From the IMG/VR virus record IMGVR_UViG_3300029922_000001, positions 186,001-250,000 of that record: a stretch of 64,000 nucleotides of DNA; one strand, 5' to 3'. A program made the position numbers and the translations under genes. The stretch's first letter is position 1. Each line of letters begins with the position of its first letter. Under the pieces are notes generated by a model. The model was not told the DNA's origin, did no database searches, and worked only from the letters and a program-made list of their open reading frames with translations. Below, one piece after another: positions 2,097-63,697 of the stretch.

Positions 2097-3935
2097 TTGA
2101 ATCCTAATGAATTTGTGATTTTCCAAACTCCTAAAAAGGCAGAAGAAATTGTAACTTCTAAAGTGTATCATCATTTTGATGGATTTCTTTATGAAGTTGC
2201 GGCTACCACAGATACATTTATGGGTATTAAGCCTAAAAACATTGAACAAGAATGCGCAATGCAATTGTTAATTGATCAAAGAATCCACATGGTTTGTTTG
2301 TCAGGAAAAGCAGGTTCAGGAAAAGCACAACCTCTATATTCTCAGGTTTTAACTCCAAGTGGATACGTTGAAATGGGTGATTTAAATAAAGGAGATTTTG
2401 TAATTGGTGACGATGGTTTACCTGCTGAAGTTTTAGATATTTACCCACAGGGTAAAAAAGATATTTATAGAGTTTATTTTTCAGATGGCTCTTTTACAGA
2501 TTCTTGTGATGAACACATTTGGTCCGTAAAAGATGAGCAGGATAGAAATTATAAAAGAGAATATCGTGATTTAGAGCTTAAAGAAATAATGAAAAAAATT
2601 AAAGGTCATGATGGTAGAAAAAACTATTCCATACCATTAGTGAAACCTGTTATTTTTGATGAAAAACAGCATGTAATAGATCCTTATTTGTTTGGGGTTT
2701 TATTGGGTGATGGTTGCATGAAGTTTAATGGTGTTTATTTATCCACTTCTGATAGTGAAATTTTAGAAAGTTTTAAACACTTATTGCCAAAAAACTATTA
2801 TCTTCAACACTCTGATAAATATGATTATAGAATTAATAACATAAAAACACCTGGAGTTAAACAGGAAAACGTTATACAGCAAGAAATTATTAGACTTAAT
2901 TTAAAAGGATCTTCTTCTATTGATAAATTTATCCCTAATGAATATAAGTTCGATTCTGTAGAAAACAGAATTAAACTACTGCAAGGACTAATGGATTCTG
3001 ATGGTACTTGTGATAAATCTGGTCAGAGTATAATCTTTACAACAGTATCTTCTAGATTAGCAGAAGATATGGAGTTTATTGTCAATAGTTTGGGTGGTGT
3101 TATTAAAAGCACCAATCAATATAAAAAATACAAATATAAAGGTGAAATGAAAATTGGTAAAAAATCTCATATATTAACTATAAGCTTGCCGATAGATATC
3201 AGTCCATTCAGACTTAGTAGAAAAAATAATCTTTATATTAATAAATCTAAATATTTACCTTCAAGATATATTACCGATGTTGAATTTATTGGAAACATAG
3301 ATTGCCAATGTATTTATGTTAATAACGAAAGTCATAGATATGTTACAGATAATTTCATTGTTACTCATAATACAATTCTTGCTCTAGCTGCTGCAATGGA
3401 TCAAATAAACGCTGGTGTCTTTAACAAAATAATTGTTATTAAACCAATTGTTCCAGTTGGTGGTAAAGATATTGGTGCTTTACCTGGTGATAAGTTTGAA
3501 AAATTAGCACCTTGGCTTGGACCTATTAGCGACAACTTCGCTCAATTATGTGGTAATTTTGGTTTTCATGGTGCAGACACTTTTGAAGCAGCAGTTAAGG
3601 ATGGTTTAATTGAAGTAGAAGCAATGGCTTATATTCAGGGACGATCTATTCCTAAAACCGTTATTCTTGTAGATGAAGCACAAAACTTAACTCCTAGAGA
3701 AGCTAGAAACATTGTGGAACGTTGTGGAGAGGGTAGTAAAATCATCTTACTTGGTGACGTTTCTCAAATTGAAAACAATTATCTTGATAAAGAAAGTTGT
3801 GGTTTAGCTCATGCTATGAATGGTACTAAAACACAAGATATTTGCGGTTGTGTAACATTAAAATCAGTTACTAGAAGTCCTCTTGCTGCTATTGCTAGTG
3901 AGATTTTCTCTTCTCCCGAAGCACAAGGTAGGTAA
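2097..3935 (+). CDS. phoH: PhoH-family ATPase interrupted by an intein
   Basis: GKAGSGK|T Walker A, GALPGDKFEKLAPW, YIQGRS, ILVDEAQNLT, GDVSQI motifs. Confidence 0.92.
   Translation: MNPNEFVIFQTPKKAEEIVTSKVYHHFDGFLYEVAATTDTFMGIKPKNIEQECAMQLLIDQRIHMVCLSGKAGSGKAQPLYSQVLTPSGYVEMGDLNKGDFVIGDDGLPAEVLDIYPQGKKDIYRVYFSDGSFTDSCDEHIWSVKDEQDRNYKREYRDLELKEIMKKIKGHDGRKNYSIPLVKPVIFDEKQHVIDPYLFGVLLGDGCMKFNGVYLSTSDSEILESFKHLLPKNYYLQHSDKYDYRINNIKTPGVKQENVIQQEIIRLNLKGSSSIDKFIPNEYKFDSVENRIKLLQGLMDSDGTCDKSGQSIIFTTVSSRLAEDMEFIVNSLGGVIKSTNQYKKYKYKGEMKIGKKSHILTISLPIDISPFRLSRKNNLYINKSKYLPSRYITDVEFIGNIDCQCIYVNNESHRYVTDNFIVTHNTILALAAAMDQINAGVFNKIIVIKPIVPVGGKDIGALPGDKFEKLAPWLGPISDNFAQLCGNFGFHGADTFEAAVKDGLIEVEAMAYIQGRSIPKTVILVDEAQNLTPREARNIVERCGEGSKIILLGDVSQIENNYLDKESCGLAHAMNGTKTQDICGCVTLKSVTRSPLAAIASEIFSSPEAQGR
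2325..3371 (+). mobile_element. 349-aa intein with LAGLIDADG homing endonuclease, Ala-start (class 3 type)
   Basis: Starts AQPLYSQVLTP after P-loop Lys, ends VTHN before Thr+1; GVLLGDG and QGLMDSDG endonuclease motifs; HIW / CQC / THN triad. Confidence 0.92.
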
Positions 3936-53252: not shown

Positions 53253-53270
53253 AATAATTCTCCTGTCTCG

Positions 53271-53344
53271 TGGTCCCTCTGCTGAGAATCGAACTCAGAC
53301 CGAACCGTTATAAGCGGTTCCGCTCTACCTTGAGCTACAAAGGG
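53271..53344 (-). tRNA. tRNA-Ile (anticodon UAU)
   Basis: CCCTTTG/CAGAGGG acceptor, GCTC/GAGC D-stem, AACCG-CTTATAA-CGGTT, CTGAG-TTCGATT-CTCAG, encoded CCA. Confidence 0.92.
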
Positions 53345-53368
53345 GTGTTTGTAATGGGTGTGGGGTTG

Positions 53369-53390
53369 GTATACGCTAATTAGCGTATAC
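53369..53390. repeat. perfect 22-bp palindrome upstream of tRNA-Ile
   Basis: gtatacgctaa-ttagcgtatac. Confidence 0.9.
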
Positions 53391-53507
53391 TTATGAAGCC
53401 AAACGCAGGAGAGTTCTGGGAAATATCATTATAGATTTGATAGTTTGACTTCATTACGTATCTATTATACCAGCATTTAGAGGAAAATTGTCTGAATTTC
53501 TATGTGT

Positions 53508-53744
53508 TTATTGATATTCTACTGTTACTGTTCCGCTAACATCAACTTCTTTATGGTTATCTTTAGTGCAAAAATAATAAATACCACTTGAGAGATGAAC
53601 TTCTCCATCAGAAGTATATTGATTGAGAATCTTGCCATCACTTGAATAAACCGTAACTTTGGAGTCAGTGTAATCTGCTCCACAACCGCACATGATTAAC
53701 GAAAATAAGGATAAGGTAAGAATAGAGATTGTAATTCTTTTCAT
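53508..53744 (-). CDS. putative lipoprotein
   Basis: signal peptide ending IMCGC. Confidence 0.65.
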   Translation of the reverse strand: MKRITISILTLSLFSLIMCGCGADYTDSKVTVYSSDGKILNQYTSDGEVHLSSGIYYFCTKDNHKEVDVSGTVTVEYQ

Positions 53745-54163
53745 GGTTTTATTATACCATATTTTGGCATACGAATCATATCTATGTAACCGCCCATTTC
53801 TGCACGAGTTTTGCCGGTTTGGTTTATGAAATTTTCAACTACAAATCCATGACGATTATACCATTCGATAAGTTGTTGTTCATTTAATTTAGGTATTCCA
53901 TGATCATATAAAGGAAGTGGTTTAACTTCTAACCATAAGGTTACACCATGACGATCTGCGTAATAGGAAATTTCATCTAGAGTTCTAGAAGCAAAGCCTT
54001 TAAATTCATGATCTGATTTGATGTAATCAATATAAAGTATTTTATTATTTCTGCCTATCAATAGTTCAACTTCAATAAGACCAAAATAAATAAAATGCTG
54101 TGATGTTTTTGGTGTAACATTATATGAACATTTCATATCAAGAAGCATTTCAGAGACGCCCAT
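53741..54163 (-). CDS. GNAT-family acetyltransferase
   Basis: IDYIKS..EFKGFASRTL, LWLEV, LIEWYNRHGF. Confidence 0.7.
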   Translation of the reverse strand: MGVSEMLLDMKCSYNVTPKTSQHFIYFGLIEVELLIGRNNKILYIDYIKSDHEFKGFASRTLDEISYYADRHGVTLWLEVKPLPLYDHGIPKLNEQQLIEWYNRHGFVVENFINQTGKTRAEMGGYIDMIRMPKYGIIKP

Positions 54164-54202
54164 ATTGAATCATTCAAAAAATAAAGCTTTTATCCTATGT
54201 AA

Positions 54203-54538
54203 TTACTTACTTATGATAAAAGCTTTATCGCTGATTCGCATGACAAAAACAGCTTCTTGTGCATAATGTTTCAAAGTGAATTCCACAATCGTTTTAATTT
54301 GTTCTTCGTTACAGGCAATCCTTACTGGAATCATTAATTCTTTATGGATTTTACCTGTGGGACTAACCCATTGCCCTTTAGAAACTTTTTGAATAGTTAA
54401 TCCTCCAGCAATATCTCTCACATAATCATCCCAGATATTGTGATAGGGAACTAATACATTTTTCCTTCCCATTTTATAGGGAACCAATATTTCCCAAACT
54501 TCAGTTTCTAAATTCATGATGAAATTATTATGACACAA
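54203..54538 (-). CDS. hypothetical phage protein
   Basis: WEILVP, GGLTI, GQW, MIPVRIAC. Confidence 0.65.
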   Translation of the reverse strand: MCHNNFIMNLETEVWEILVPYKMGRKNVLVPYHNIWDDYVRDIAGGLTIQKVSKGQWVSPTGKIHKELMIPVRIACNEEQIKTIVEFTLKHYAQEAVFVMRISDKAFIISK

Positions 54539-54548
54539 TCTATGCTAT

Positions 54549-54833
54549 TTATGCAAGGGCAGGAGATTTTGTTTTAATAACGTTCAAACAGTCGATGTAA
54601 CCCATTGCTCTTTCTTTAATTTCTTTATTATCAAAGATTAGAACTGTAGGTACGGTAGTGATAAAAAATGATTCTGCGGCTTCCATGTTTTCTTCGATAT
54701 CACAAATAGCAACATTCATATCGTCTGTAATTTGCTTTTTAAGATTTTGGCATGGCGCACACCAAGGGGCAGAAAATAAGACTATGCTTTGCGAAGCTGT
54801 GTCTTTAATTTGTTCGTATGTAATTGATTTCAT
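54549..54833 (-). CDS. thioredoxin-like protein
   Basis: FSAPWCAPC, TTVPT cis-Pro loop. Confidence 0.85.
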   Translation of the reverse strand: MKSITYEQIKDTASQSIVLFSAPWCAPCQNLKKQITDDMNVAICDIEENMEAAESFFITTVPTVLIFDNKEIKERAMGYIDCLNVIKTKSPALA

Positions 54834-54905
54834 AGGTATATATTATGATAATTCAAATGAACCCAAATATAACCAAAAAGGTTAGAACTCGTCGGAGTGA
54901 ATCAG

Positions 54906-54994
54906 TAGAAGGCTAGGAAATCGAGTCCTTAACGGCTATTTACCGTCACACCTATTTTCGAAATAGGGCTAATAACCATATTAGAAAACCTTCT
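54906..54994 (-). tRNA. non-canonical tRNA-like RNA, anticodon CGA (Ser), 8/4 fold with 6-bp D-stem and long variable arm
   Basis: AGAAGGTT/AGCCTTCT; CTAATA-TGGT-TATTAG; CCTAT-TTCGAAA-ATAGG; TGACGG/CCGTTA; AGGA-CTCGATT-TCCT; no encoded CCA. Confidence 0.75.
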
Positions 54995-55002
54995 TATAAT
55001 TC

Positions 55003-55257
55003 TTACTGTAGTGTAGCCAAGAATTCATCAATAGCTTCGCTAAATGATGCAAACTCAACTCTGGAACGATCAGGGTACAAAACAGACCAAGTTTCACCAT
55101 CCATCTTTTCAATTAAAGATTTTTTACCTGAAACCTTCAATCCATATTGCAAAACTTGAGCAATAGGCATCTTTAACAGTGAGTTGTGATAATAAGGTTC
55201 TGGGGCAGGAATTGGTGGAACGACGTTAGATTCTTTTACTGGTTTTTCTTTTTTCAT
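55003..55257 (-). CDS. hypothetical protein
   Basis: 84 aa; GGAG RBS. Confidence 0.65.
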   Translation of the reverse strand: MKKEKPVKESNVVPPIPAPEPYYHNSLLKMPIAQVLQYGLKVSGKKSLIEKMDGETWSVLYPDRSRVEFASFSEAIDEFLATLQ

Positions 55258-55277
55258 ATTAATCTCCTAATAATGAA

Positions 55278-55625
55278 TTATACAGTTAATTCAGTATTAG
55301 GAGATTTGATTTTGGATTTTTGATATAAATCTTCGTAGTGTTTATCAATTTCTTGTTTAAAAGTCTTGAAATTCAAACCATGTTCAGGTGCCCATGATCT
55401 ACTACCACAAGAAGTAACGACATCTAAATCAATAAGCATTTTGCCCACTGTGCTATCAGAAATATAAGCATCATGATTTTCTAACTCTTCTAAAAGTTCG
55501 AATAAATCTTGAAGATCATATTCAACATCGTTAATAGTAATCCAATAACGATAAGCTATATATGGTTCAAGTCTTGGTTTACTAATAGGCAAATCGTTAG
55601 TCAAATCTAAGGTTAATTGTGGCAT
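55278..55625 (-). CDS. hypothetical protein (paralogue of the next gene)
   Basis: YWITINDVEYDLQDLFELL; ATG 6 nt after TATACT. Confidence 0.7.
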   Translation of the reverse strand: MPQLTLDLTNDLPISKPRLEPYIAYRYWITINDVEYDLQDLFELLEELENHDAYISDSTVGKMLIDLDVVTSCGSRSWAPEHGLNFKTFKQEIDKHYEDLYQKSKIKSPNTELTV

Positions 55626-55643
55626 AATCTGAGTATACCTTAA

Positions 55644-56003
55644 TTAGTCATTTATGTGTGCTAAACGACTTTTATAGATTAAAGTCGTTAATTCTTCATT
55701 GAGAAAAGATATAAATTTATCATAATTAACATCGGCATTTTGAATGGAATGATTTACCTCTGGATATTTACCTTTATTCGAATGCACAATAACTTTTAAG
55801 TCTTGTAACATAGCTCTTGTGGCTGGATTCCAAACATGTCCCCATCTACGATGTTCAAAACTTTTAAATATATCCAGTAATTCCTGAATGTTATATTTGA
55901 CTCCCTTAACCACAATGAAATAATGATGAACCCAAACTTGCTCAGACTCATATTTAACAGTATCAATGCCTAAATCATTCATAATATCAGAAGTATACCT
56001 CAA
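55644..56003 (-). CDS. hypothetical protein (paralogue of the previous gene)
   Basis: YFIVVKGVKYNIQELLDIF. Confidence 0.7.
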   Translation of the reverse strand: MRYTSDIMNDLGIDTVKYESEQVWVHHYFIVVKGVKYNIQELLDIFKSFEHRRWGHVWNPATRAMLQDLKVIVHSNKGKYPEVNHSIQNADVNYDKFISFLNEELTTLIYKSRLAHIND

Positions 56004-56647
56004 ATCGTATATGATTTGAGGTTATAAAAATACGCCCTTGTTAATCTTTTGACCGTAGAGCTAGGTCCAATCCAAGACATGACGTGCCAACCACTAACAC
56101 CCATTGACGAGCCTGTAACAGCCATTTGGAGCCTAATGGATATGTTCTTGACTTTCATGCCCAACTCTACACATAATGCTTTAATTGTGGTTTGAACCCA
56201 CTCTAAGGAAATGTCATTCTCACCTTCAAGAAGAGGTATATAATGATCTAAAAACAATCTAAAATCATCATCAAAAAGAGTTGGATTCTCAAAGGGAATT
56301 TCATAGTCAGAAATGGCAATACAACTCAAATGTTTAGCAAAATCAGATAGAATAAATGCTTTATCCTTAATATGCACAAGCATTTCATCAATGCGAGGAT
56401 GATTCAAAGTGTCTTTGAAATGATGTAGTTGCGCTCCCATCAATCGTTTATTGAAATCCTTAATTTGCTTATTGTAGTCAACCTCATTGTCCTCATTGAC
56501 TTCTATGGGGTTGTTTTTAATGATCGTATCTAAGATCATGAGATTTGGTAACTTTGAGTTATCAATATCGAACAAATTTGGTTTGTATAGAAAATCGCGC
56601 ATAATGCGTTTATTATACTTTATATTAACCCCTTTCAGCTTCTTCAA
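56000..56647 (-). CDS. stand-alone class I aaRS (GluRS-type) anticodon-binding domain protein
   Basis: IKALCVELGMKVKNISIRLQMAVTGSSMGVSGWHVMSWIGPSSTVKRL resembles the GluRS C-terminal helical domain; no HIGH/KMSKS; true start may be ATG 56602. Confidence 0.6.
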   Translation of the reverse strand: MKKLKGVNIKYNKRIMRDFLYKPNLFDIDNSKLPNLMILDTIIKNNPIEVNEDNEVDYNKQIKDFNKRLMGAQLHHFKDTLNHPRIDEMLVHIKDKAFILSDFAKHLSCIAISDYEIPFENPTLFDDDFRLFLDHYIPLLEGENDISLEWVQTTIKALCVELGMKVKNISIRLQMAVTGSSMGVSGWHVMSWIGPSSTVKRLTRAYFYNLKSYTI

Positions 56648-57044
56648 GAGCTAATTTAAGCATACCAACTTGACATTCTTTCCAATTAGCCACTCTTGGA
56701 TTTTTGGAGTTTTGTTCGTATTTGCGAATATTATCTTTTAGATATTCGCATTGTTGAGCTAATTCTTTTTTCTTTTTATCTAAAATGATAACCAGTTGTT
56801 CTTTAAGTGTTTTAACATTATTATCAATCAAAATATGTTTTACGTCCCAAGGATTATAATGTCTATAATTGTACTTACCAAGTCTAACAACAAATAAATC
56901 AACTTTACCATTTGGCAAAATTACATCTTCTGTAGCGTTTGTCCAGTCGGATTCGTAAACATAACATTCCGTTATAACGAATTCATTATTGGCTTGACTA
57001 TACAATAAACCGAATGTATTTGGTTTTTCTTTGGGCAATAACAT
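56625..57044 (-). CDS. hypothetical protein
   Basis: 139-aa ORF. Confidence 0.65.
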   Translation of the reverse strand: MLLPKEKPNTFGLLYSQANNEFVITECYVYESDWTNATEDVILPNGKVDLFVVRLGKYNYRHYNPWDVKHILIDNNVKTLKEQLVIILDKKKKELAQQCEYLKDNIRKYEQNSKNPRVANWKECQVGMLKLALEEAERG

Positions 57045-57328
57045 TATAATGGTATTATACCTTTTTTGCCGTATGTCTTGTTAGGTAATGGTTTTGTCCA
57101 TGAAATCAAATCATCGCCAGCTTTTTGCAGTTCTTTTCTAGTTGGTGTTCCATGAAGCATATACATTCCTATTGCTTTAACATCTTTTGATACATCTTCC
57201 AGTACATAATCTAATCCAGTGTAATCATGTAATTTCAACTGTGCGGCATTAGATTGTGCAATTACAGTTAAAATTGAAGCTTCTTCTGCGGGAACATTAA
57301 TCATATTATTCCTCAATATAGAAGTCAC
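57044..57328 (-). CDS. hypothetical protein
   Basis: 94-aa ORF. Confidence 0.6.
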   Translation of the reverse strand: MTSILRNNMINVPAEEASILTVIAQSNAAQLKLHDYTGLDYVLEDVSKDVKAIGMYMLHGTPTRKELQKAGDDLISWTKPLPNKTYGKKGIIPL

Positions 57329-57692
57329 TTAATTTGCCAAGGAAAAAATCGTGAATTATTTCAGTGTCACTTTCTGCGTCTTCGTCAGTTGTTTTAGTGT
57401 CACCCTCTTCATCTTCGTCACCTACTTCAATTGTTGCAACTATAACATTATTACTATCACTAACTATTGCAACCAAACCGTTAATTAAACCTAGTGCTGA
57501 AATGTAAAACTTGTCATCAATACAAGTAAGACCACAAGTTAAACCATCTAATTTTTCTACTGTTTCGGTATCTATTGGATGTTTAGTTAACAAAACCTTT
57601 GATACTATTTCTGGGGCAACTTCAACATATTTATTTAATAATGAAATGATAGATTCTAAATTGTCACTTCCAAGTCCACTGTACATACTCAT
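57306..57692 (-). CDS. hypothetical protein
   Basis: 128 aa; ATG 5 nt after TACAAT. Confidence 0.7.
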   Translation of the reverse strand: MSMYSGLGSDNLESIISLLNKYVEVAPEIVSKVLLTKHPIDTETVEKLDGLTCGLTCIDDKFYISALGLINGLVAIVSDSNNVIVATIEVGDEDEEGDTKTTDEDAESDTEIIHDFFLGKLSDFYIEE

Positions 57693-57708
57693 GCTTTATT
57701 GTAAAGCA

Positions 57709-58053
57709 TTAAAATGTGTCATGTGGTTCTTGACCAATAGCTTGTTTTAAATCTGTGTGAAATTGGGCAACAGGATTTGGTTGTTGTTGCAATAATGGTT
57801 GTTGAGTAGCGTCAGGCTTATAAATTAAATGCCACAACCCTTCAATGGTCTTTAAGATTTGTGGTAGTTTAGAATCGGTATCATCAACTTCATGTTCTAT
57901 AACAGAAGCAAGATCACGTAACTCTCCAGCGGCATGAGTACAAGTACTTGCAGTTGTTAATCTAATAGCAACTCTAGTAACAGAGTCCGCTTTTTTAAAT
58001 TCACCCTTTTTGTCATATGCCGTTGCGTATTCAATAAGTTTATCTGCGTTCAT
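57709..58053 (-). CDS. hypothetical protein with recurrent motif
   Basis: KLIEYATAYDKKGEFKKADSV. Confidence 0.7.
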   Translation of the reverse strand: MNADKLIEYATAYDKKGEFKKADSVTRVAIRLTTASTCTHAAGELRDLASVIEHEVDDTDSKLPQILKTIEGLWHLIYKPDATQQPLLQQQPNPVAQFHTDLKQAIGQEPHDTF

Positions 58054-58089
58054 GATTACCAAATTCTACAAACCTGGTAATCATTCCTT

Positions 58090-58446
58090 TTAATCAGTAT
58101 TAACTTTTAGAATTAATCTTGTTAAATCTGCGGTGTCTGCTTTAATGCCATAAAATTCTTGTAAGTCTAATGCCCTATTCCATGCGGAATTGTATGGATT
58201 TTCAGGTTTACTAACTTCAAATTCCTTTTGAATTGCCACAATTTCTTCATCTAGTCTAAATTGTGCGTTAGTTAAATATTTATAAATCCACTTTACCGTT
58301 CCATATTCTTTTTGACGTTCAACATGCACTGTTGCGTGTGCTAAAATAGCATCAGTAAAATTGTGATTTTTTCTAACAACGATCACTGGATTGAAAGCAA
58401 AAGCTTGACATGCTCCAGGTAGCCAAGACACACGGATAATTTTCAT
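58090..58446 (-). CDS. zincin-like small protein with degenerate HExxH
   Basis: AILAHATVHVERQKEYG..WIYKYL. Confidence 0.5.
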   Translation of the reverse strand: MKIIRVSWLPGACQAFAFNPVIVVRKNHNFTDAILAHATVHVERQKEYGTVKWIYKYLTNAQFRLDEEIVAIQKEFEVSKPENPYNSAWNRALDLQEFYGIKADTADLTRLILKVNTD

Positions 58447-58655
58447 ATGATTATTATAGCTTGTTTTGTTGAGCTAAATCAAGTAGTATTTTTTGACGTT
58501 CTAATGGTGCAGAGACATAATCTGTTTTGATTAATTTACTGGTTTGCGTACTAGATAGACGATCTAATATACCAATCATGCTATTTAATAATATAATTTT
58601 TCTATTTTTTCTTTATCGCAATTTACAATAATTTTATCCAGTCTATCCAATCTAT

Positions 58656-58982
58656 TCATTTTATTCGCTCCATTAATATTTTGCTTCTTTTAGATGGTGA
58701 TTTGGTTAGGAAGCCACAACCTTTAGCTTTATTGTAATCTAAATCAAAATCAAATTGATCTTTAGTGATATCAACTATGTCTTGTGTTTGTGGATTTTTT
58801 AAAAACCAATGAGTAATACCATCGACATTTAAAATGAATGGTTTGAAACCCAATTCTTTATATTTAAGATGATAAGCTACCTCGGAAGCCACATAACAAT
58901 GACCCCAATAAGGATTAGAATGACCCCTGAATTGGGGTTTTAATAAATCTTGTGTTAAATGGCTTTGGATTTGTGTAATCAT
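58656..58982 (-). CDS. hypothetical phage protein
   Basis: WGHCYVASE, THWFL, VDITKDQF (possible Cys-His-Asp triad). Confidence 0.7.
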   Translation of the reverse strand: MITQIQSHLTQDLLKPQFRGHSNPYWGHCYVASEVAYHLKYKELGFKPFILNVDGITHWFLKNPQTQDIVDITKDQFDFDLDYNKAKGCGFLTKSPSKRSKILMERIK

Positions 58983-59527
58983 TTCTTGACGATTCTTTTC
59001 CTGATATCAGCTTCAATTAAGGCATAGTCAGCACGTACTCTATCTGTGACTTGATAACCATCCTCAACATCAATACCAAAACGTTTTCGTGCATTGACGG
59101 TATCAGCATCTGGACCTGTCATGGGTAGATATTTAAGACTACCATTAACTTTAACCATTTCTCTATCGTTATTGCCGTAAGCACATTTAGCTACTGAATT
59201 GTAAGGATTACCATCTTCTGGAATATAACCACGCAGTTTACTTCCGTCCCAATAAATAATAAAGAACACCGGATATTCCCAGTCTCCACCAGCACTAACT
59301 CCTAAAAAGGTTAAACCATTATCAAGGGTGTGAATACCCGTTAATGGTGTGAATTTATCTTCAGCATCTTCTACGTTCTCACAATCAAAGCTAACTTTTG
59401 CTAAATCCTTTGTGATAGTTGTGGTAAGTGTTGGGTATTGATAATAACCGAATTCATCAGAATCTCTAGCTTTTTGAAGTTTAATTCTAAAATCTTTTTC
59501 AGGTATTTCCACAAAGAATCTACTCAT
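58979..59527 (-). CDS. hypothetical protein
   Basis: 182 aa; AGGDWEYPVFFIIYWDG. Confidence 0.7.
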   Translation of the reverse strand: MSRFFVEIPEKDFRIKLQKARDSDEFGYYQYPTLTTTITKDLAKVSFDCENVEDAEDKFTPLTGIHTLDNGLTFLGVSAGGDWEYPVFFIIYWDGSKLRGYIPEDGNPYNSVAKCAYGNNDREMVKVNGSLKYLPMTGPDADTVNARKRFGIDVEDGYQVTDRVRADYALIEADIRKRIVKK

Positions 59528-59720
59528 TGTCTAGATCCACTACTTTAGTTAAATTAGGTAATAACTCTACTAGCTTACGATAAGCTTTAGTGTTAATATG
59601 AAATTTTTCAGTATCTGTGTATATTCTAAACTGACTATCATTGAACGAAGTTACAATACCTACAATTTTATCTGTATTAACATGGTAAATATATGGTCCA
59701 TTTTTATATGTGATATACAT
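59520..59720 (-). CDS. hypothetical protein
   Basis: 66 aa; ATG 6 nt after TATAAT. Confidence 0.65.
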   Translation of the reverse strand: MYITYKNGPYIYHVNTDKIVGIVTSFNDSQFRIYTDTEKFHINTKAYRKLVELLPNLTKVVDLDNE

Positions 59721-59887
59721 GCTTACATTATAACACTATTTGACTATAAAATACAACACTTTAGGTGGATTACGGTAATATTTAGCTAAAGTTGCTTGAC
59801 CCTCCAGTGTTGCTAATGCACGATCAATAATAGCTTCTCTATCTTTCATATCTTGAATAATTGCATTAATATTTTTCGTGTTACTCG

Positions 59888-59993
59888 TGGAGCGGGTAGC
59901 GGAATTCGAATCCGCATTTTAGCGTTCCTCTAAGTAAATATTTTAATATTTCTCACAGGCAACGCCATGTTCTAACCATTGAACTATATCCGC
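59888..59993 (-). tRNA. tRNA-Gly (GCC) with a 31-nt insert/intron (59927-59957) between positions 36 and 37
   Basis: GCGGATA acceptor, GTTC/GAAC D-stem, TGGCG-TTGCC|insert|AA-CGCTA, GCGGA-TTCGAAT-TCCGC, CCA; removing the insert gives a canonical 75-nt tRNA. Confidence 0.88.
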
Positions 59994-60014
59994 GTGAATA
60001 TATTATACCACTTA

Positions 60015-60281
60015 TTAAGACGCTTTGACCTTTTTGTGAGTGTATTGTTCGGCGTTAATTAATTGTGAAATATTAGGATCTGAGCTAAATTCAATATCAT
60101 TCTTAATGATATTGAGGACTTCTTCACCATTTGGCATAGAAATTAATTTCTCTATTAAAGAAAATAATTTTCTATTTTGTTCCATTTGTGCGTCAAGTAC
60201 ATCTTTATTAACCATAATTTTGGGTGTAAAATTTGGTATATATTTATAACTGCATGGCATTCTTTCTGATCGTATTGGCAT
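60015..60281 (-). CDS. hypothetical protein
   Basis: 88-aa ORF. Confidence 0.55.
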   Translation of the reverse strand: MPIRSERMPCSYKYIPNFTPKIMVNKDVLDAQMEQNRKLFSLIEKLISMPNGEEVLNIIKNDIEFSSDPNISQLINAEQYTHKKVKAS

Positions 60282-60287
60282 AGATTA

Positions 60288-60656
60288 TTATAGTCTAATT
60301 CTAAAAGAAACTGATGGATCAACAATAATTACAGGTTCTGGATCATAATAACCAACAATAGGACCGTTTTCATAATAAGCTACCCCACCACCTTCATACC
60401 AAAACATGGTGACATCACCAATAACGTAGGTTGTAACCCAATGGCATCTAGGTCTTTCACCAATGCGCCAAACACGAGTAGGAGTGAATCTATAATGTTC
60501 AAATCTACGAATTCTAGAGTGTTCTGGTCTGCGATTTTGTTCTTGTCTAATTGCGGGTCTGCGTGATTCTTGATGACCACCACGACGCTGAGCTAAACCA
60601 CTAACAGAAAGAGCTAGAATAGAGCAAAGAGCAATAAGTTTTAGATTTTGTTTCAT
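60288..60656 (-). CDS. putative secreted protein
   Basis: N-terminal signal peptide (LIALCSILALSVSGLA), Arg-rich segment. Confidence 0.65.
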   Translation of the reverse strand: MKQNLKLIALCSILALSVSGLAQRRGGHQESRRPAIRQEQNRRPEHSRIRRFEHYRFTPTRVWRIGERPRCHWVTTYVIGDVTMFWYEGGGVAYYENGPIVGYYDPEPVIIVDPSVSFRIRL

Positions 60657-60686
60657 ACCTTATTATTATCCCTTTGCACTTTAAAT

Positions 60687-61037
60687 TTACTGAGAATTAT
60701 TTAAGATATCACTTCTTAAATGATCATATTTGCTTCGTTCATCTGCATACAAAGTGATAAGGGATTGTAGTCTTTCATCAGTAATGTCAGTAAGAATTTC
60801 CATTTCTGGAATTTCACCCCATACGTTGTATATCTTATGTTTAATACAAAACTGCGTATGTCTTCGTTTACAATAAGGCTGGAAAATTAGCACATAAAAC
60901 ATAAATATTGTGAAAATACAGCCCATTACAAGTACCCAATGGAAAATAGCACTTGCAATTAAAAGAAAGTATCCACCAAAAACAATCCACATTGGCAGAA
61001 CACGAGTGGTGAAATGTGTGTTATAAAAATTACTCAT
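60687..61037 (-). CDS. putative membrane protein
   Basis: two N-terminal hydrophobic helices. Confidence 0.65.
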   Translation of the reverse strand: MSNFYNTHFTTRVLPMWIVFGGYFLLIASAIFHWVLVMGCIFTIFMFYVLIFQPYCKRRHTQFCIKHKIYNVWGEIPEMEILTDITDERLQSLITLYADERSKYDHLRSDILNNSQ

Positions 61038-61264
61038 GATGAAAGTGTACCTTATTTCTTGATATGTTTATGGGTGTACTCATGAAATTCGGCAAGATGA
61101 AGATGCGGATGGGCGTTATTTTGAGCCATTTGCTGTATTGATTTCTTTGCCTTTAAGCATTTAGTATGGAAATATCCTTCCGGGGGGTTGACACAAGCTT
61201 AAAACATTTTAAATGCCAATTCCAGTGTTTGTTACAAAACTTACAAGTTTTCATATATAACTCG

Positions 61265-61292
61265 TGGAGCGAATAGCGGGATTCGAACCCGC
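61265..61292 (-). pseudogene. orphan tRNA 3' half (T-arm, acceptor 3' strand, CCA), Gly-like
   Basis: GCGGG-TTCGAAT-CCCGC-TATTCGC-T-CCA with no matching 5' half upstream. Confidence 0.75.
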
Positions 61293-61521
61293 CGATTTAT
61301 AATTTAATGTGGTTTACCATATTGATCGCCAAAATATATCAAAGCAATTAATTCTAGAAAAACAGAACTAAAATGATGAAATTCCAATGAACCTAATAAG
61401 GCTATGAAGAAAAATATCATGGAAACTTACACTTTTACATTTTGGACAATGTAGTTTTTCTGTAGCTTTCAAGTCTTTGAAATTGACAATAAATTGTCTT
61501 GTTGCTATCATAGTTTTACTC

Positions 61522-61620
61522 GGAGCGGGTGTGGGTAGTCGAAACCCAATCTACTACTTCCTTTAGGTATATTCCTATCCCAAAGGAAGGAAGTTATAAT
61601 AGCCGTTATAAGACACCCGC
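61522..61620 (-). tRNA. tRNA-Gly (UCC) with a 25-nt insert/intron (61560-61584) between positions 36 and 37
   Basis: GCGGGTG/CACCCGC acceptor, glyT-like D-arm, ACTTC-CTTCC|insert|AA-GTAGT (one T-T mismatch), TGGGT-TTCGACT-ACCCA; ends TCC without the final A. Confidence 0.82.
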
Positions 61621-61647
61621 TTACACATATATTATGCCCAATAATGA

Positions 61648-62940: not shown

Positions 62941-63429
62941 CTAAGTACTATCTTTAGTTGGATTAACACTAAATAATTCTTTTCTTATTTCCATCCACAA
63001 TTTTCCTAATTGATTTTGTCCATCTTTATTAGGTCCCCATCCCCAAAAATTATCACGCCAACTACACTCTACGATTGCATTATCACCACTAGCTTTAAGT
63101 TTTTTCATAACATACGGATGTTGATTTGCTTTTTCTTTTAAAATTTCTTTCATAATATCAAGTTTAACTTCATCCCAATCAACACGTCTTATATTTTTAT
63201 TTTCCTCAGCCCATTTGAAACAAGCATGTGCTGAAGGCATTTTTCTAATCATATTTTTGATTTTTGGATCGTCAAATTTCTCAGAATGATAAGCGTGTTC
63301 TGATGTTGGATAAATCTTACCCTTCCAATATAGTTGAAATGCAGAAAAATTAGAGAAAATATAATAATCACGTTCATAACAATCAAGGATTGGTAAGTCG
63401 TAATTCGCTAAATCGTGATATTCAATCAT
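62941..63429 (-). CDS. NADAR (YbiA/DUF1768) family hydrolase
   Basis: FSNF, YPTSEHAYHSEKF, DNFWGWG, GQNQLGKLWMEIR; start at ATG 63429. Confidence 0.9.
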   Translation of the reverse strand: MIEYHDLANYDLPILDCYERDYYIFSNFSAFQLYWKGKIYPTSEHAYHSEKFDDPKIKNMIRKMPSAHACFKWAEENKNIRRVDWDEVKLDIMKEILKEKANQHPYVMKKLKASGDNAIVECSWRDNFWGWGPNKDGQNQLGKLWMEIRKELFSVNPTKDST

Positions 63430-63436
63430 GCTATTA

Positions 63437-63697
63437 TTATAAGTAATCTTCATGATATTCTACTACTGGAGTGTTTGATTTAGCTTTAGACTCTTCTTCA
63501 GCTAACATGCCCTTTTGATAAGCCTCATTAAGCAATCTTAAATGTCTAGCTTCATGATCAGTAATCTCTCCATCCATTTGTGAAATTGAATTTATATCTT
63601 GTTCAACATACATCATCTTAGGAGATTCGTTAACGTCCTGAAATAATTTAAGATCGTGTGTTTTGGTTGTATTTTCGTTTATGATATTTGGTTTCAT
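63437..63697 (-). CDS. hypothetical protein
   Basis: 86 aa; ATG 5 nt after CATAAT. Confidence 0.6.
   Translation of the reverse strand: MKPNIINENTTKTHDLKLFQDVNESPKMMYVEQDINSISQMDGEITDHEARHLRLLNEAYQKGMLAEEESKAKSNTPVVEYHEDYL

What the first reader, a model, noticed from the sequence alone, without database searches (positions are those of the whole stretch)
53267..61522. All five tRNA-type elements share a CGAG 3' trailer
Seen (minus strand): CCA-CGAG after tRNA-Ile (53267-53270), tRNA-Gly GCC (59884-59887) and the orphan half (61261-61264); TC-CGAG after tRNA-Gly UCC (61519-61522, as if CA were deleted); and CTCCGA-CGAG 14 nt after the CGA-anticodon element (54888-54891). These tRNAs are otherwise different isotypes. 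Inference: a dedicated 3'-processing signal for a phage or host nuclease, or the scar of a common capture/integration mechanism.
Basis: partly seen in the sequence, partly recalled or inferred. Interest (0 to 1): 0.6.

Follow-up and report, generated by a model that had tools for sequence, protein, structure and literature searches.

The report
Universal CGAG tag after phage tRNAs
In this 441-kb peat phage essentially every tRNA gene is followed by the four letters CGAG, and the phage's own protein-coding messages avoid CGAG about four-fold, which points to an undescribed sequence-specific RNA-cutting or RNA-marking step.

Summary
All five CGAG strings sit at the stated coordinates. Four follow tRNA-type 3' ends; the 'CGA-anticodon element' is not a tRNA. 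The window lies in a 441,498-bp virus record from peat. Genome-wide, 30 of 31 tRNA calls carry CGAG(A) at the 3' end, usually straight after the discriminator N73, or after N73-C or N73-CCA. About nine further tRNA-like ends carry it too (chance P about 1e-49).

CGAG also follows plain hairpins in non-coding stretches. The exact tetramer is purged from the sense strand of ORFs: 71 observed against 288 in synonymous-codon shuffles, in all three frames and for genes on both DNA strands. The antisense strand and every one-letter variant are near expectation. This indicates an RNA-level signal, not a DNA scar.

A second, distantly related peat megaphage (521-kb contig) shows the same trailer and avoidance. 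Three phages with terminase 37-46% identical lack the trailer, two of them tested also lack the avoidance, and no cellular genome scanned shows the trailer.

Best reading: CGAG marks a cut site for a sequence-specific endoribonuclease that releases tRNAs and small RNAs. No enzyme was identified and no RNA data exist, so the mechanism is inferred.

The parts
53271..53344 (-). tRNA-Ile(TAT), canonical, CCA encoded
   Evidence: Aragorn; Rfam RF00005 58.7 bits; cloverleaf
53267..53270 (-). CGAG trailer directly after the encoded CCA. It is followed by ACAGGAGAATTATT and the ATG of a 75-aa ORF.
   Evidence: sequence; offset class N73-CCA|CGAG
54892..54985 (-). Non-coding row of four hairpins (one with a T-loop-like TTCGAAA loop, one with a CTCGATT loop). 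Not a tRNA.
   Evidence: MFE fold without acceptor closure; no tRNA match at E up to 10
54888..54891 (-). CGAG 17 nt downstream of the last hairpin of that element. The weakest of the five; possibly chance.
   Evidence: gap 17
59888..59993 (-). tRNA-Gly(GCC)-like gene with a 31-nt insertion in the anticodon loop, CCA encoded
   Evidence: Rfam 52.8 bits with a 35-nt insert in the loop; Aragorn -i; fold; reproduced in other samples
59884..59887 (-). CGAG trailer (CCA|CGAGT)
60002..60007 (-). TATAAT box 8 nt upstream of position +1 of the Gly-GCC element (promoter-like; no CGAG upstream)
   Evidence: sequence reading; inference
61265..61330 (-). Truncated tRNA-like element: canonical T-arm and acceptor 3' strand with CCA, weak 5' acceptor strand, no anticodon arm
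   Evidence: fold; partial tmRNA/T-arm match at 61276-61292
61261..61264 (-). CGAG trailer (CCA|CGAGT)
61523..61620 (-). tRNA-Gly(UCC)-like element with a ~22-nt insertion that pairs with the anticodon. Acceptor, D- and T-arms fold. Not called by Rfam or Aragorn.
   Evidence: fold -37.7 kcal/mol; T-loop regex
61519..61522 (-). CGAG trailer (N73-C|CGAGT), the common 'C' offset class rather than a deleted CA
   Evidence: 8 other tRNAs of the genome have the same N73-C-CGAG arrangement
61631..61636 (-). CATAAT box 10 nt upstream of +1 of the Gly-UCC element (promoter-like)
   Evidence: sequence reading; inference

Best explanation
CGAG is an RNA-level punctuation mark: the recognition or cleavage site of a sequence-specific endoribonuclease, phage- or host-encoded and not yet identified. 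The enzyme would act on single-stranded CGAG, best when it lies 0-3 nt past the 3' end of a helix.

Proposed steps:
1. tRNA genes are transcribed in arrays or together with neighbouring ORFs.
2. A cut at or just 5' of CGAG leaves N73, N73-C or N73-CCA.
3. All three are ends that a CCA-adding enzyme can complete, or that are already complete.
4. RNase P trims the short A/U-rich leader (...AAAU) of the next tRNA.
5. The same mark releases small hairpin RNAs and separates cistrons.

Because a stray CGAG in a message would be cut, the phage has purged the tetramer from the sense strand of its genes.

Shown: the universality, position, strand logic and specificity of the motif, and its recurrence in a second phage. 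Inferred: that the event is cleavage, where exactly the cut falls, and who makes it.
For: 1. 30 of 31 tRNA calls, plus about 9 further T-arm/acceptor ends, are followed by CGAG, mostly CGAGA.
2. Offsets after N73 are none (11), C (8) and CCA (4) in this genome, and none (7) and C (2) in the second phage. A cut 5' of CGAG would always give a legitimate tRNA end.
3. Isolated tRNAs (genome 413604, 353602, 359405; window Ile and Gly-GCC) have CGAG downstream but not upstream. The CGAG-to-next-tRNA distance varies from 9 to 15 nt. The tag therefore belongs to the 3' side and is not a fixed-distance promoter.
4. Sense-strand ORF counts are 75 against 246 expected (second-order Markov) and 71 against 288 (synonymous shuffles; z = -13.7). 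All three frames are depleted (27/99, 24/69, 20/120). Genes on the + and - strands give ratios of 0.25 and 0.47. The antisense ratio is 0.87 by the Markov expectation and 0.74 in the synonymous shuffles. All 12 one-letter variants give 0.69-1.09.
5. Relatives without the trailer do not avoid CGAG (ratios 1.22 and 0.97).
6. A second peat megaphage (JGI Ga0302280_1000099, part of the 521,591-bp ENA contig k141_1408874) shares only 3 ORFs with this genome in the 30 kb held. It has CGAG after all nine Aragorn tRNA calls, with about 15 tRNA-type 3' ends tagged in total and one tRNA-like end in the cluster untagged (CCAATTTT trailer). Its sense count is 8 against 20.5 expected, Poisson P = 0.0015.
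7. Non-tRNA intergenic CGAGA sites lie 0-3 nt after a hairpin in 21 of 40 cases, against 102 of 406 for control pentamers (P = 6e-4).
8. RNA end-healing genes are present: a T4 Rnl1-like ligase, PNK-like kinases, Tpt1 flanking a 10-tRNA array, and a DEDD 3'-5' exoribonuclease beside another array.
Against: - No RNA data exist. All 20 sequencing runs that hold the phage are DNA, so no cleavage has been seen.
- No candidate nuclease was found. Six-frame searches of the genome for RegB, MazF/PemK, ToxN, RNase III, RNase E/G, PIN, RNase Z (Lactamase_B_2), RNase T and tRNA-splicing endonuclease were all negative. ORFs inside and beside the arrays gave no nuclease domain except homing endonucleases.
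- Six tRNAs carry CGAG inside the T-loop (TTCGAGT) and would have to be protected by structure.
- A few tRNAs have odd offsets (CTC, TA, CCG, or N73 inside CGAG).
- About 18 copies of CGAG sit in a conserved promoter-like motif upstream of late genes, where the tetramer may be read as DNA.
- 71 sense-strand sites remain.
Confidence: 0.5

Rival explanations
1. CGAG is not cut itself. It steers exonucleolytic 3' maturation or RNase P. The leading C (C74, sometimes C75) pairs with the RNase P L15 loop and brakes DEDD-type 3'-5' exonucleases (the RNase T 'C effect'). Trimming of the A/U-rich spacer would then stop at N73-C(C).
For: Every trailer starts with C at position 74. A Rv2179c-like DEDD 3'-5' exoribonuclease is encoded just upstream of the 172-kb tRNA array. 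An RNase_T-family gene lies near a tRNA cluster of the second phage. The C effect of RNase T and the RCCA-L15 pairing are established knowledge; I did not test either here.
Against: This reading explains the C but not the invariant GAG. It does not explain the four-fold sense-strand purge of the exact tetramer inside ORFs, where every one-letter variant (including CGAA, CGAC and CGAT) is near expectation. The two exonucleases are not homologous to each other. CCA-CGAG ends would be left with an extra C.
Confidence: 0.12
2. CGAG is a transcription-level signal, acting as a pause, terminator or promoter element for the polymerase that transcribes the phage. It would be read on the non-template strand or in nascent RNA just past a helix.
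For: About 18 late-gene upstream regions share ATCCCCAATAGGGGA-WWY-CGAG-GTATACT-N6-7-ATG, so the tetramer is part of a conserved DNA motif. A helix followed by a short conserved sequence resembles a terminator layout. Avoidance restricted to the sense strand would also follow from a termination signal.
Against: Arrays of up to 10 tRNAs have spacers of only 9-15 nt, and some spacers leave just 5 nt between CGAG and the next tRNA. That leaves no room for re-initiation, so termination at each tag would silence the array. The variable distance to the next +1 and the absence of CGAG upstream of isolated tRNAs argue against a promoter. ORFs start 9-17 nt after some tags (window Ile; genome 353673).
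Confidence: 0.1
3. CGAG is the binding site of an RNA-binding protein that sorts, protects or escorts phage tRNAs and small RNAs, with no cleavage. Messages avoid it so as not to be sequestered.
For: The positional and avoidance data are the same as for cleavage. No nuclease was found.
Against: A tag that stays on the RNA would block aminoacylation, so it must still be removed. That adds a step without explaining anything extra. No candidate binder was found.
Confidence: 0.08
4. CGAG is a DNA scar of the way the tRNA genes were captured, duplicated or integrated, or the five window cases are coincidence.
For: Three window elements share a longer 3' string (CGCTCCACGAG or CGCTCCGAG), as duplicated copies would. 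Homing endonuclease genes lie beside several arrays.
Against: - The tag follows about 40 unrelated tRNAs of many isotypes at five-plus loci.
- It follows non-tRNA hairpins.
- It recurs in a second phage with different tRNAs.
- It is tied to transcription-oriented avoidance in ORFs.
- Chance is excluded at P about 1e-49.
- Unrelated phage tRNA arrays show 0-10% CGAG trailers.
Confidence: 0.02

Closest known systems
T4 RegB endoribonuclease (cuts GG|AG in early-mRNA Shine-Dalgarno regions; PMC1702504, PMC3014915)
   Same: It would be a phage system built on one tetranucleotide in single-stranded RNA, mostly intergenic, with not every copy being a target. Here - strand genes keep more CGAG than + strand genes (ratios 0.47 and 0.25), which may mean the effect differs between gene classes.
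   Different: The tetramer differs (CGAG, not GGAG). No RegB homologue is present. The sites sit at tRNA and hairpin 3' ends rather than in ribosome-binding sites. To my knowledge RegB is not used for tRNA maturation.
Bacterial tRNA 3'-end maturation (RNase Z after N73 for CCA-less genes; RNase E plus exonucleases for CCA-encoding genes; CCA-adding enzyme)
   Same: Most of these tRNAs lack CCA, and the inferred product ends at N73 or at a partial CCA, as after RNase Z. The spacers are A/U-rich, like RNase E sites.
   Different: No known pathway uses a fixed tetranucleotide trailer. C74 is an anti-determinant for B. subtilis RNase Z (established knowledge), yet here every trailer begins with C. 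The phage encodes neither RNase Z nor a CCA-adding enzyme. Relatives use plain CCA-A/T or T-rich trailers.
MazF/ToxN-type sequence-specific mRNA interferases, including type III toxin-antitoxin RNA repeats
   Same: These enzymes recognise short (3-7 nt) single-stranded sites and select for site-free transcripts. ToxN cuts its own tandem RNA repeats at a fixed motif. Here four tandem hairpins (genome 355,130-355,350) each end in AAC-CGAGA.
   Different: No PemK/MazF or ToxN homologue was found. Those toxins are not tRNA maturases. To my knowledge, and in the paper search, no described member cuts CGAG.
Cas6/Csy4-type hairpin-anchored processing and the mitochondrial 'tRNA punctuation' model
   Same: Cleavage is placed by a helix and occurs at its 3' base. 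Structured RNAs punctuate polycistronic transcripts.
   Different: Here a sequence tag outside the helix is the invariant feature and is avoided elsewhere. No CRISPR array is involved, and I did not search for Cas6.

Membership tests
RegB-type phage endoribonuclease system | A RegB (PF10715) homologue is encoded | tested here: not met
   Six-frame search of the 441-kb genome gave no match. The control genomes cannot ring for this family, so sensitivity is unverified.
RegB-type phage endoribonuclease system | The target is GGAG within ribosome-binding sites | tested here: not met
   The motif is CGAG at tRNA or hairpin 3' ends. GGAG is only mildly depleted (ratio 0.69).
RegB-type phage endoribonuclease system | Endonucleolytic cleavage inside the tetramer | not testable with these tools
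   No RNA runs hold the phage.
RNase Z-dependent CCA-less tRNA genes | The gene lacks CCA and the trailer is permissive (no C74/C75) | tested here: not met
   Most genes lack CCA, but every trailer starts with C, and 8 start with CC.
RNase Z-dependent CCA-less tRNA genes | An RNase Z gene is available | tested here: inconclusive
   None is found in the phage (PF12706). The host is unknown.
MazF/PemK or ToxN mRNA interferase | A toxin-fold protein is encoded | tested here: not met
   PF02452 and PF13958 are absent. The ToxN control genomes did not ring.
MazF/PemK or ToxN mRNA interferase | The short single-stranded recognition site is avoided in protected transcripts | tested here: met
   Sense-strand CGAG is 0.25 of expectation, and the effect is specific to the exact tetramer.
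Canonical tRNA genes (the five window elements) | A cloverleaf scoring above the Rfam RF00005 gathering score | tested here: inconclusive
   Met for 2 of 5 elements (Ile, Gly-GCC). Gly-UCC and the truncated element are tRNA-like by fold only. The CGA element fails.
Intrinsic terminator | A G+C-rich hairpin followed by a T-run | tested here: not met
   The helices are followed by N-CGAGA and A-rich sequence, not a T-run.

The most novel reading that the evidence does not exclude
Two barely related peat megaphages depend on one tetranucleotide-specific endoribonuclease. It matures every phage tRNA and small RNA at a CGAG tag and at the same time destroys CGAG-bearing host messages (host shut-off), while phage messages are purged of the site. 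Together with the intron-like anticodon-loop insertions and the Tpt1, Rnl1-like ligase and PNK-like genes, this would amount to a self-contained, partly eukaryote-like tRNA biogenesis pathway in a bacteriophage.
Probability: 0.25. Interest if true: 0.9.

Novelty: new variant of a known kind. Interest (0 to 1): 0.75.

Why it matters
tRNA 3'-end formation in bacteria and their phages is thought to rely on structure (RNase Z, RNase P) and loose A/U-rich sites, not on a fixed sequence tag. Here a four-letter tag follows every tRNA, and the same four letters are the only non-palindromic tetramer strongly and strand-specifically removed from the phage's genes. That predicts a new RNA-cleaving or RNA-marking specificity. 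The prediction can be tested directly with a simple substrate: a minihelix or pre-tRNA with or without CGAG. If the enzyme is phage-encoded, it would be a new tool-like ribonuclease and a possible host shut-off mechanism. If it is host-encoded, it shows phages adopting a host nuclease's site as their own processing signal while evading it in their messages. It also gives a cheap genomic signature, tag plus sense-strand avoidance, for finding such systems elsewhere.

Tried and rejected
RNA evidence: the look-up of sequencing runs returned only DNA runs, all peat metagenomes. Read laying on four of them confirmed the sequence (2 SNPs, no indels) but gave no diversity to test conservation.

Candidate enzymes: six-frame family searches of the genome were negative for PolyA_pol, RegB, Lactamase_B_2, RtcB, PemK, ToxN, RNase III, tRNA_int_endo, RNase_T, RNase_E_G and PIN. 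Pfam and PHROG scans of about 45 ORFs in and around the tRNA arrays and hairpin-rich regions found no endoribonuclease. Atlas look-ups of three unknown ORFs gave a TraB/GumN-like fold, an HTH-like protein and nothing.

Relatives:
- A single-protein GyrA search found only an unrelated 47-52% GC virus (G001, GyrA 30% identical) with intron-bearing tRNAs and no CGAG.
- INPHARED tblastn found nothing.
- Loose T-loop...CGAGA patterns in IMG/VR gave only chance hits.
- The 185,579-species genome scan gave 52 single chance hits and no genome with tagged tandem tRNAs. The host may not be in the collection, and the pattern required tandem tRNAs.

Promoter reading of the spacer: rejected because of the variable 9-15 nt distance and the lack of upstream tags at isolated tRNAs.

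DNA-level (restriction) avoidance: rejected because the depletion follows gene orientation on both strands. The palindrome GGCC behaves differently.

Rfam scans: about 301 kb were scanned at gathering threshold, namely the window and genome 140,001-186,000 and 250,001-441,498. They found only tRNAs and no RNase P RNA, ribozyme or tmRNA. The first 140 kb received only the tRNA-family search.

The second phage's record could not be opened as a whole genome and is not in IMG/VR.

Full report
WHAT IS THERE. The window is bases 186,001-250,000 of a 441,498-bp virus record (34% G+C, CheckV 100% complete) assembled from a peat metagenome.

Four of them follow tRNA-type 3' ends:
- a canonical tRNA-Ile(TAT);
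- an Rfam-positive tRNA-Gly(GCC) with a 31-nt insertion in the anticodon loop;
- a Gly(UCC)-like cloverleaf with a ~22-nt insertion that pairs with the anticodon;
- a truncated element with only a T-arm, an acceptor 3' strand and a weak 5' strand.

The fifth, the 'CGA-anticodon element', is a row of four hairpins without acceptor closure. Its CGAG lies 17 nt beyond the last helix. I do not count it as a tRNA. Contigs from four other peat samples reproduce the 56.5-62 kb stretch with two SNPs and no indel, so these odd genes are real sequence.

THE PATTERN IS GENOME-WIDE. Aragorn and Rfam together tRNAs in the record, and 30 have CGAG at the 3' end. The exception is a doubtful 265-nt call. A T-loop regex adds about nine more tagged tRNA-like ends. 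With a conservative background, P is about 2e-49.

After pairing each 5' end with its 3' partner, CGAG starts directly after the discriminator N73 in 11 tRNAs, after N73-C in 8 and after N73-CCA in 4, with a few odd cases. The tag is usually CGAGA, followed by 4-10 A/T letters and then the next tRNA.

Isolated tRNAs have the tag downstream but not upstream, and the distance from the tag to the next tRNA varies from 9 to 15 nt. The tag therefore belongs to the 3' side of the upstream RNA. tRNA arrays of unrelated IMG/VR phages show it at chance level: 1 of 36, 4 of 38 and 0 of 9.

IT IS AN RNA-LEVEL SIGNAL. On the sense strand of 536 crude ORF calls, CGAG is the second most under-represented tetramer (75 observed, 246 expected by a second-order Markov model), after GGCC at 1 against 275.
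- Against synonymous-codon shuffles the count is 71 against 288 (z = -13.7 in the first run). All three frames are depleted (27/99, 24/69, 20/120).
- The complement CTCG, which is CGAG on the antisense strand, is at 0.74-0.87 of expectation.
- All twelve one-letter variants are at 0.69-1.09.
- The depletion follows gene orientation: ratio 0.25 for + strand genes and 0.47 for - strand genes, in every quarter of the genome. That excludes a DNA-level cause such as restriction avoidance, which is what the palindrome GGCC shows.
- On the transcribed strand of co-directional intergenic DNA, CGAG instead outnumbers CTCG 81 to 37.

NOT ONLY tRNAs. Many intergenic CGAGA sites follow plain hairpins with 0-3 unpaired letters between, in 21 of 40 cases against 25% for control pentamers (P = 6e-4). 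Examples:
- hairpins that precede the first tRNA of an array (genome 251,619 and 275,169);
- a 1.5-kb non-coding stretch (354,989-356,511) with four tandem hairpins, each ending AAC-CGAGA, and six more tagged hairpins;
- repeats at 316.8-317.2 kb and 389.3-389.6 kb.

About 18 further copies lie in a conserved motif before late genes (ATCCCCAATAGGGGA-WWY-CGAG-GTATACT-N6-7-ATG). There the tetramer may be part of a promoter or overlap a GAGG ribosome-binding site. I treat this as a separate feature.

RELATIVES.
- A terminase alignment found IMG/VR relatives with 37-46% identity. Their tRNAs end in CCA plus A/T, or in T-rich trailers, with no CGAG. The two of them tested (G003, G006) do not avoid CGAG in ORFs (ratios 1.22 and 0.97), although each avoids its own palindromes.
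- A tandem-tag pattern scanned over JGI metagenomes found, besides the record itself, one other contig from the same sample. It is part of a 521,591-bp ENA contig.
- In the 30 kb I could hold, this second phage has two tRNA clusters. All nine Aragorn tRNA calls and about six further T-arm ends are followed by CGAG(A); one tRNA-like end in the cluster instead has a CCAATTTT trailer. GGCC is 0 against 14 expected, and sense-strand CGAG is 8 against 20.5 (P = 0.0015).
- Only three of its ORFs match this genome.
- The same pattern found nothing convincing in IMG/VR or in 185,579 species genomes.

The tag and the avoidance therefore travel together. They occur in two distantly related phages that probably share a host, since both avoid GGCC, and they are absent from phages whose terminase is 37-46% identical.

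MECHANISM. The best reading is that single-stranded CGAG, preferably just past a helix, is the site of a sequence-specific endoribonuclease.
- A cut 5' of CGAG would leave N73, N73-C or N73-CCA. All three are proper substrates or products of CCA addition.
- RNase P would remove the ...AAAU leader of the next tRNA.
- Messages avoid the site because it would be cut.
- CGAG inside six T-loops (TTCGAGT) would be shielded by tertiary structure.

What is shown is the motif's universality, position, strand logic, specificity and recurrence. The cleavage, its exact position and the enzyme are inferred.

I could not find the enzyme. Searches for RegB, MazF, ToxN, RNase III, RNase E/G, PIN, RNase Z, RNase T and splicing endonuclease were negative. 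ORFs around the arrays gave no endoribonuclease.

The genome does encode an RNA end-healing kit:
- Tpt1 (E = 1.6e-44) directly beside the 10-tRNA array;
- a T4 Rnl1-like ligase;
- four other RNA-ligase-family ORFs;
- PNK-like kinases;
- a DEDD 3'-5' exoribonuclease beside the 172-kb array.

That kit would suit ends made by a metal-independent RNase, which leaves a 2',3'-cyclic phosphate. This link is inference.

Because two barely related phages share the tag, a host enzyme or a mobile phage gene is as likely as a vertically inherited phage gene.

RIVALS.
- An exonuclease brake or RNase P contact explains the leading C but not GAG, and not the purge from ORFs.
- A terminator or pause reading conflicts with arrays whose spacers leave no room to restart.
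- A promoter reading conflicts with the variable spacing and with isolated tRNAs.
- A binding-protein tag is possible but still needs removal.
- A capture scar or chance is excluded.

COMPARISON AND NOVELTY. The closest analogue in logic is T4 RegB, which cuts GGAG (PMC1702504, PMC3014915), along with MazF/ToxN-type interferases. No homologue of any of these is present, and none is known to serve as a tRNA 3' maturase. Known bacterial tRNA 3' processing uses no fixed trailer sequence, and a leading C is unfavourable for RNase Z (established knowledge). Full-text searches found no report of a CGAG-specific RNase or of a conserved phage tRNA trailer. I rate this a new variant of a known kind, namely sequence-specific RNA processing. 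It is well supported as a signal and unproven as a mechanism.

Noticed in passing
window 59888-59993 and 61523-61620; genome 172713-172810, 251433-251524, 253296-253394, 275381-275484, 389592-389681; second phage L331 about 1690-1790: At least seven tRNA genes carry 14-31 nt insertions in the anticodon loop, too short for group I introns. In several the insertion pairs with the anticodon to form one long helix. The genome encodes Tpt1 (genome 253903-254463, beside a tRNA array), a T4 Rnl1-like ligase (402911-403441) and PNK-like kinases (287907, 270258), but no RtcB or splicing endonuclease. This suggests protein-catalysed tRNA splicing or anticodon-loop repair in a phage.
   Followed up: partly
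whole genome; also second phage (L399, L397, L396): GGCC is almost absent: 1 site in ORFs against about 275 expected, and 0 against 14 in the second phage. This is classic avoidance of a HaeIII-type restriction system and hints that the two phages share a host. The relatives avoid other palindromes (GATC; CGCG and CATG).
   Followed up: partly
genome 357,400-436,000, + strand, about 18 copies (e.g. 357412, 392687, 415277, 427759): A conserved motif, ATCCCCAATAGGGGA-WWY-CGAGGTATACT-N6-7-ATG, lies upstream of genes. It looks like a late promoter whose -10-like TATACT sits 6-7 nt before the ATG, which would give leaderless or near-leaderless messages.
   Followed up: partly
window, e.g. 60002-60007, 61631-61636, and before the ORF starts at 54833, 54538 and 53744: TATAAT or CATAAT boxes lie only 6-10 nt upstream of ATG codons and of tRNA +1 positions, with no Shine-Dalgarno sequence between. 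Many early-looking genes may be transcribed as leaderless RNAs. A phage IF3 gene lies at genome 254486-255016.
   Followed up: no
genome 172128-172200 and 353602-353673: There are two tRNAs with anticodon CTA (amber suppressors). ORF coverage rises only from 0.75 to 0.80 when TAG is read through, similar to the rise for TGA, so the genome does not look broadly recoded.
   Followed up: partly
genome 354,989-356,511 (L186 4989-6511): A 1.5-kb non-coding stretch holds four tandem hairpins with loop RGGTTCTCGAAAA and tail AAC-CGAGA, plus six more hairpin-CGAGA units. No Rfam family matches. It may be an array of small RNAs.
   Followed up: partly
window 56000-56647 (-), 62941-63453 (-), 2097-3935 (+): Three notable ORFs: a stand-alone Anticodon_2 (GluRS/GlnRS anticodon-binding) domain protein among the tRNA elements; a NADAR-domain protein; and a PhoH-like ATPase interrupted by a LAGLIDADG intein. 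An ADP-ribosylglycohydrolase lies at genome 5753-6676.
   Followed up: no
window about 59923 (loose ends in runs X2, X3, X4): Contigs from another organism in the same samples match the 3' part of the Gly-GCC element and then continue as an ordinary, insertion-free tRNA-Gly 5' half that contains GGCC. This may be a cellular (host?) tRNA-Gly related to the phage copy.
   Followed up: no
genome 293574-293927: Aragorn calls a tmRNA (tag GKSYAYVG) that Rfam does not confirm at gathering score. Its 3' end is followed by CGCGA and a terminator-like hairpin, not CGAG.
   Followed up: partly
window 53369-53390: A perfect 22-nt palindrome, GTATACGCTAATTAGCGTATAC, lies 25 nt upstream of tRNA-Ile. It could be an operator or an RNA hairpin.
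   Followed up: no
genome 276283-277275; second phage L396 4115-5275: TnpB/Cas12f-like (OrfB_IS605) genes sit beside tRNA clusters in both CGAG phages (38% identical to each other). HNH homing endonuclease genes flank several arrays.
   Followed up: no
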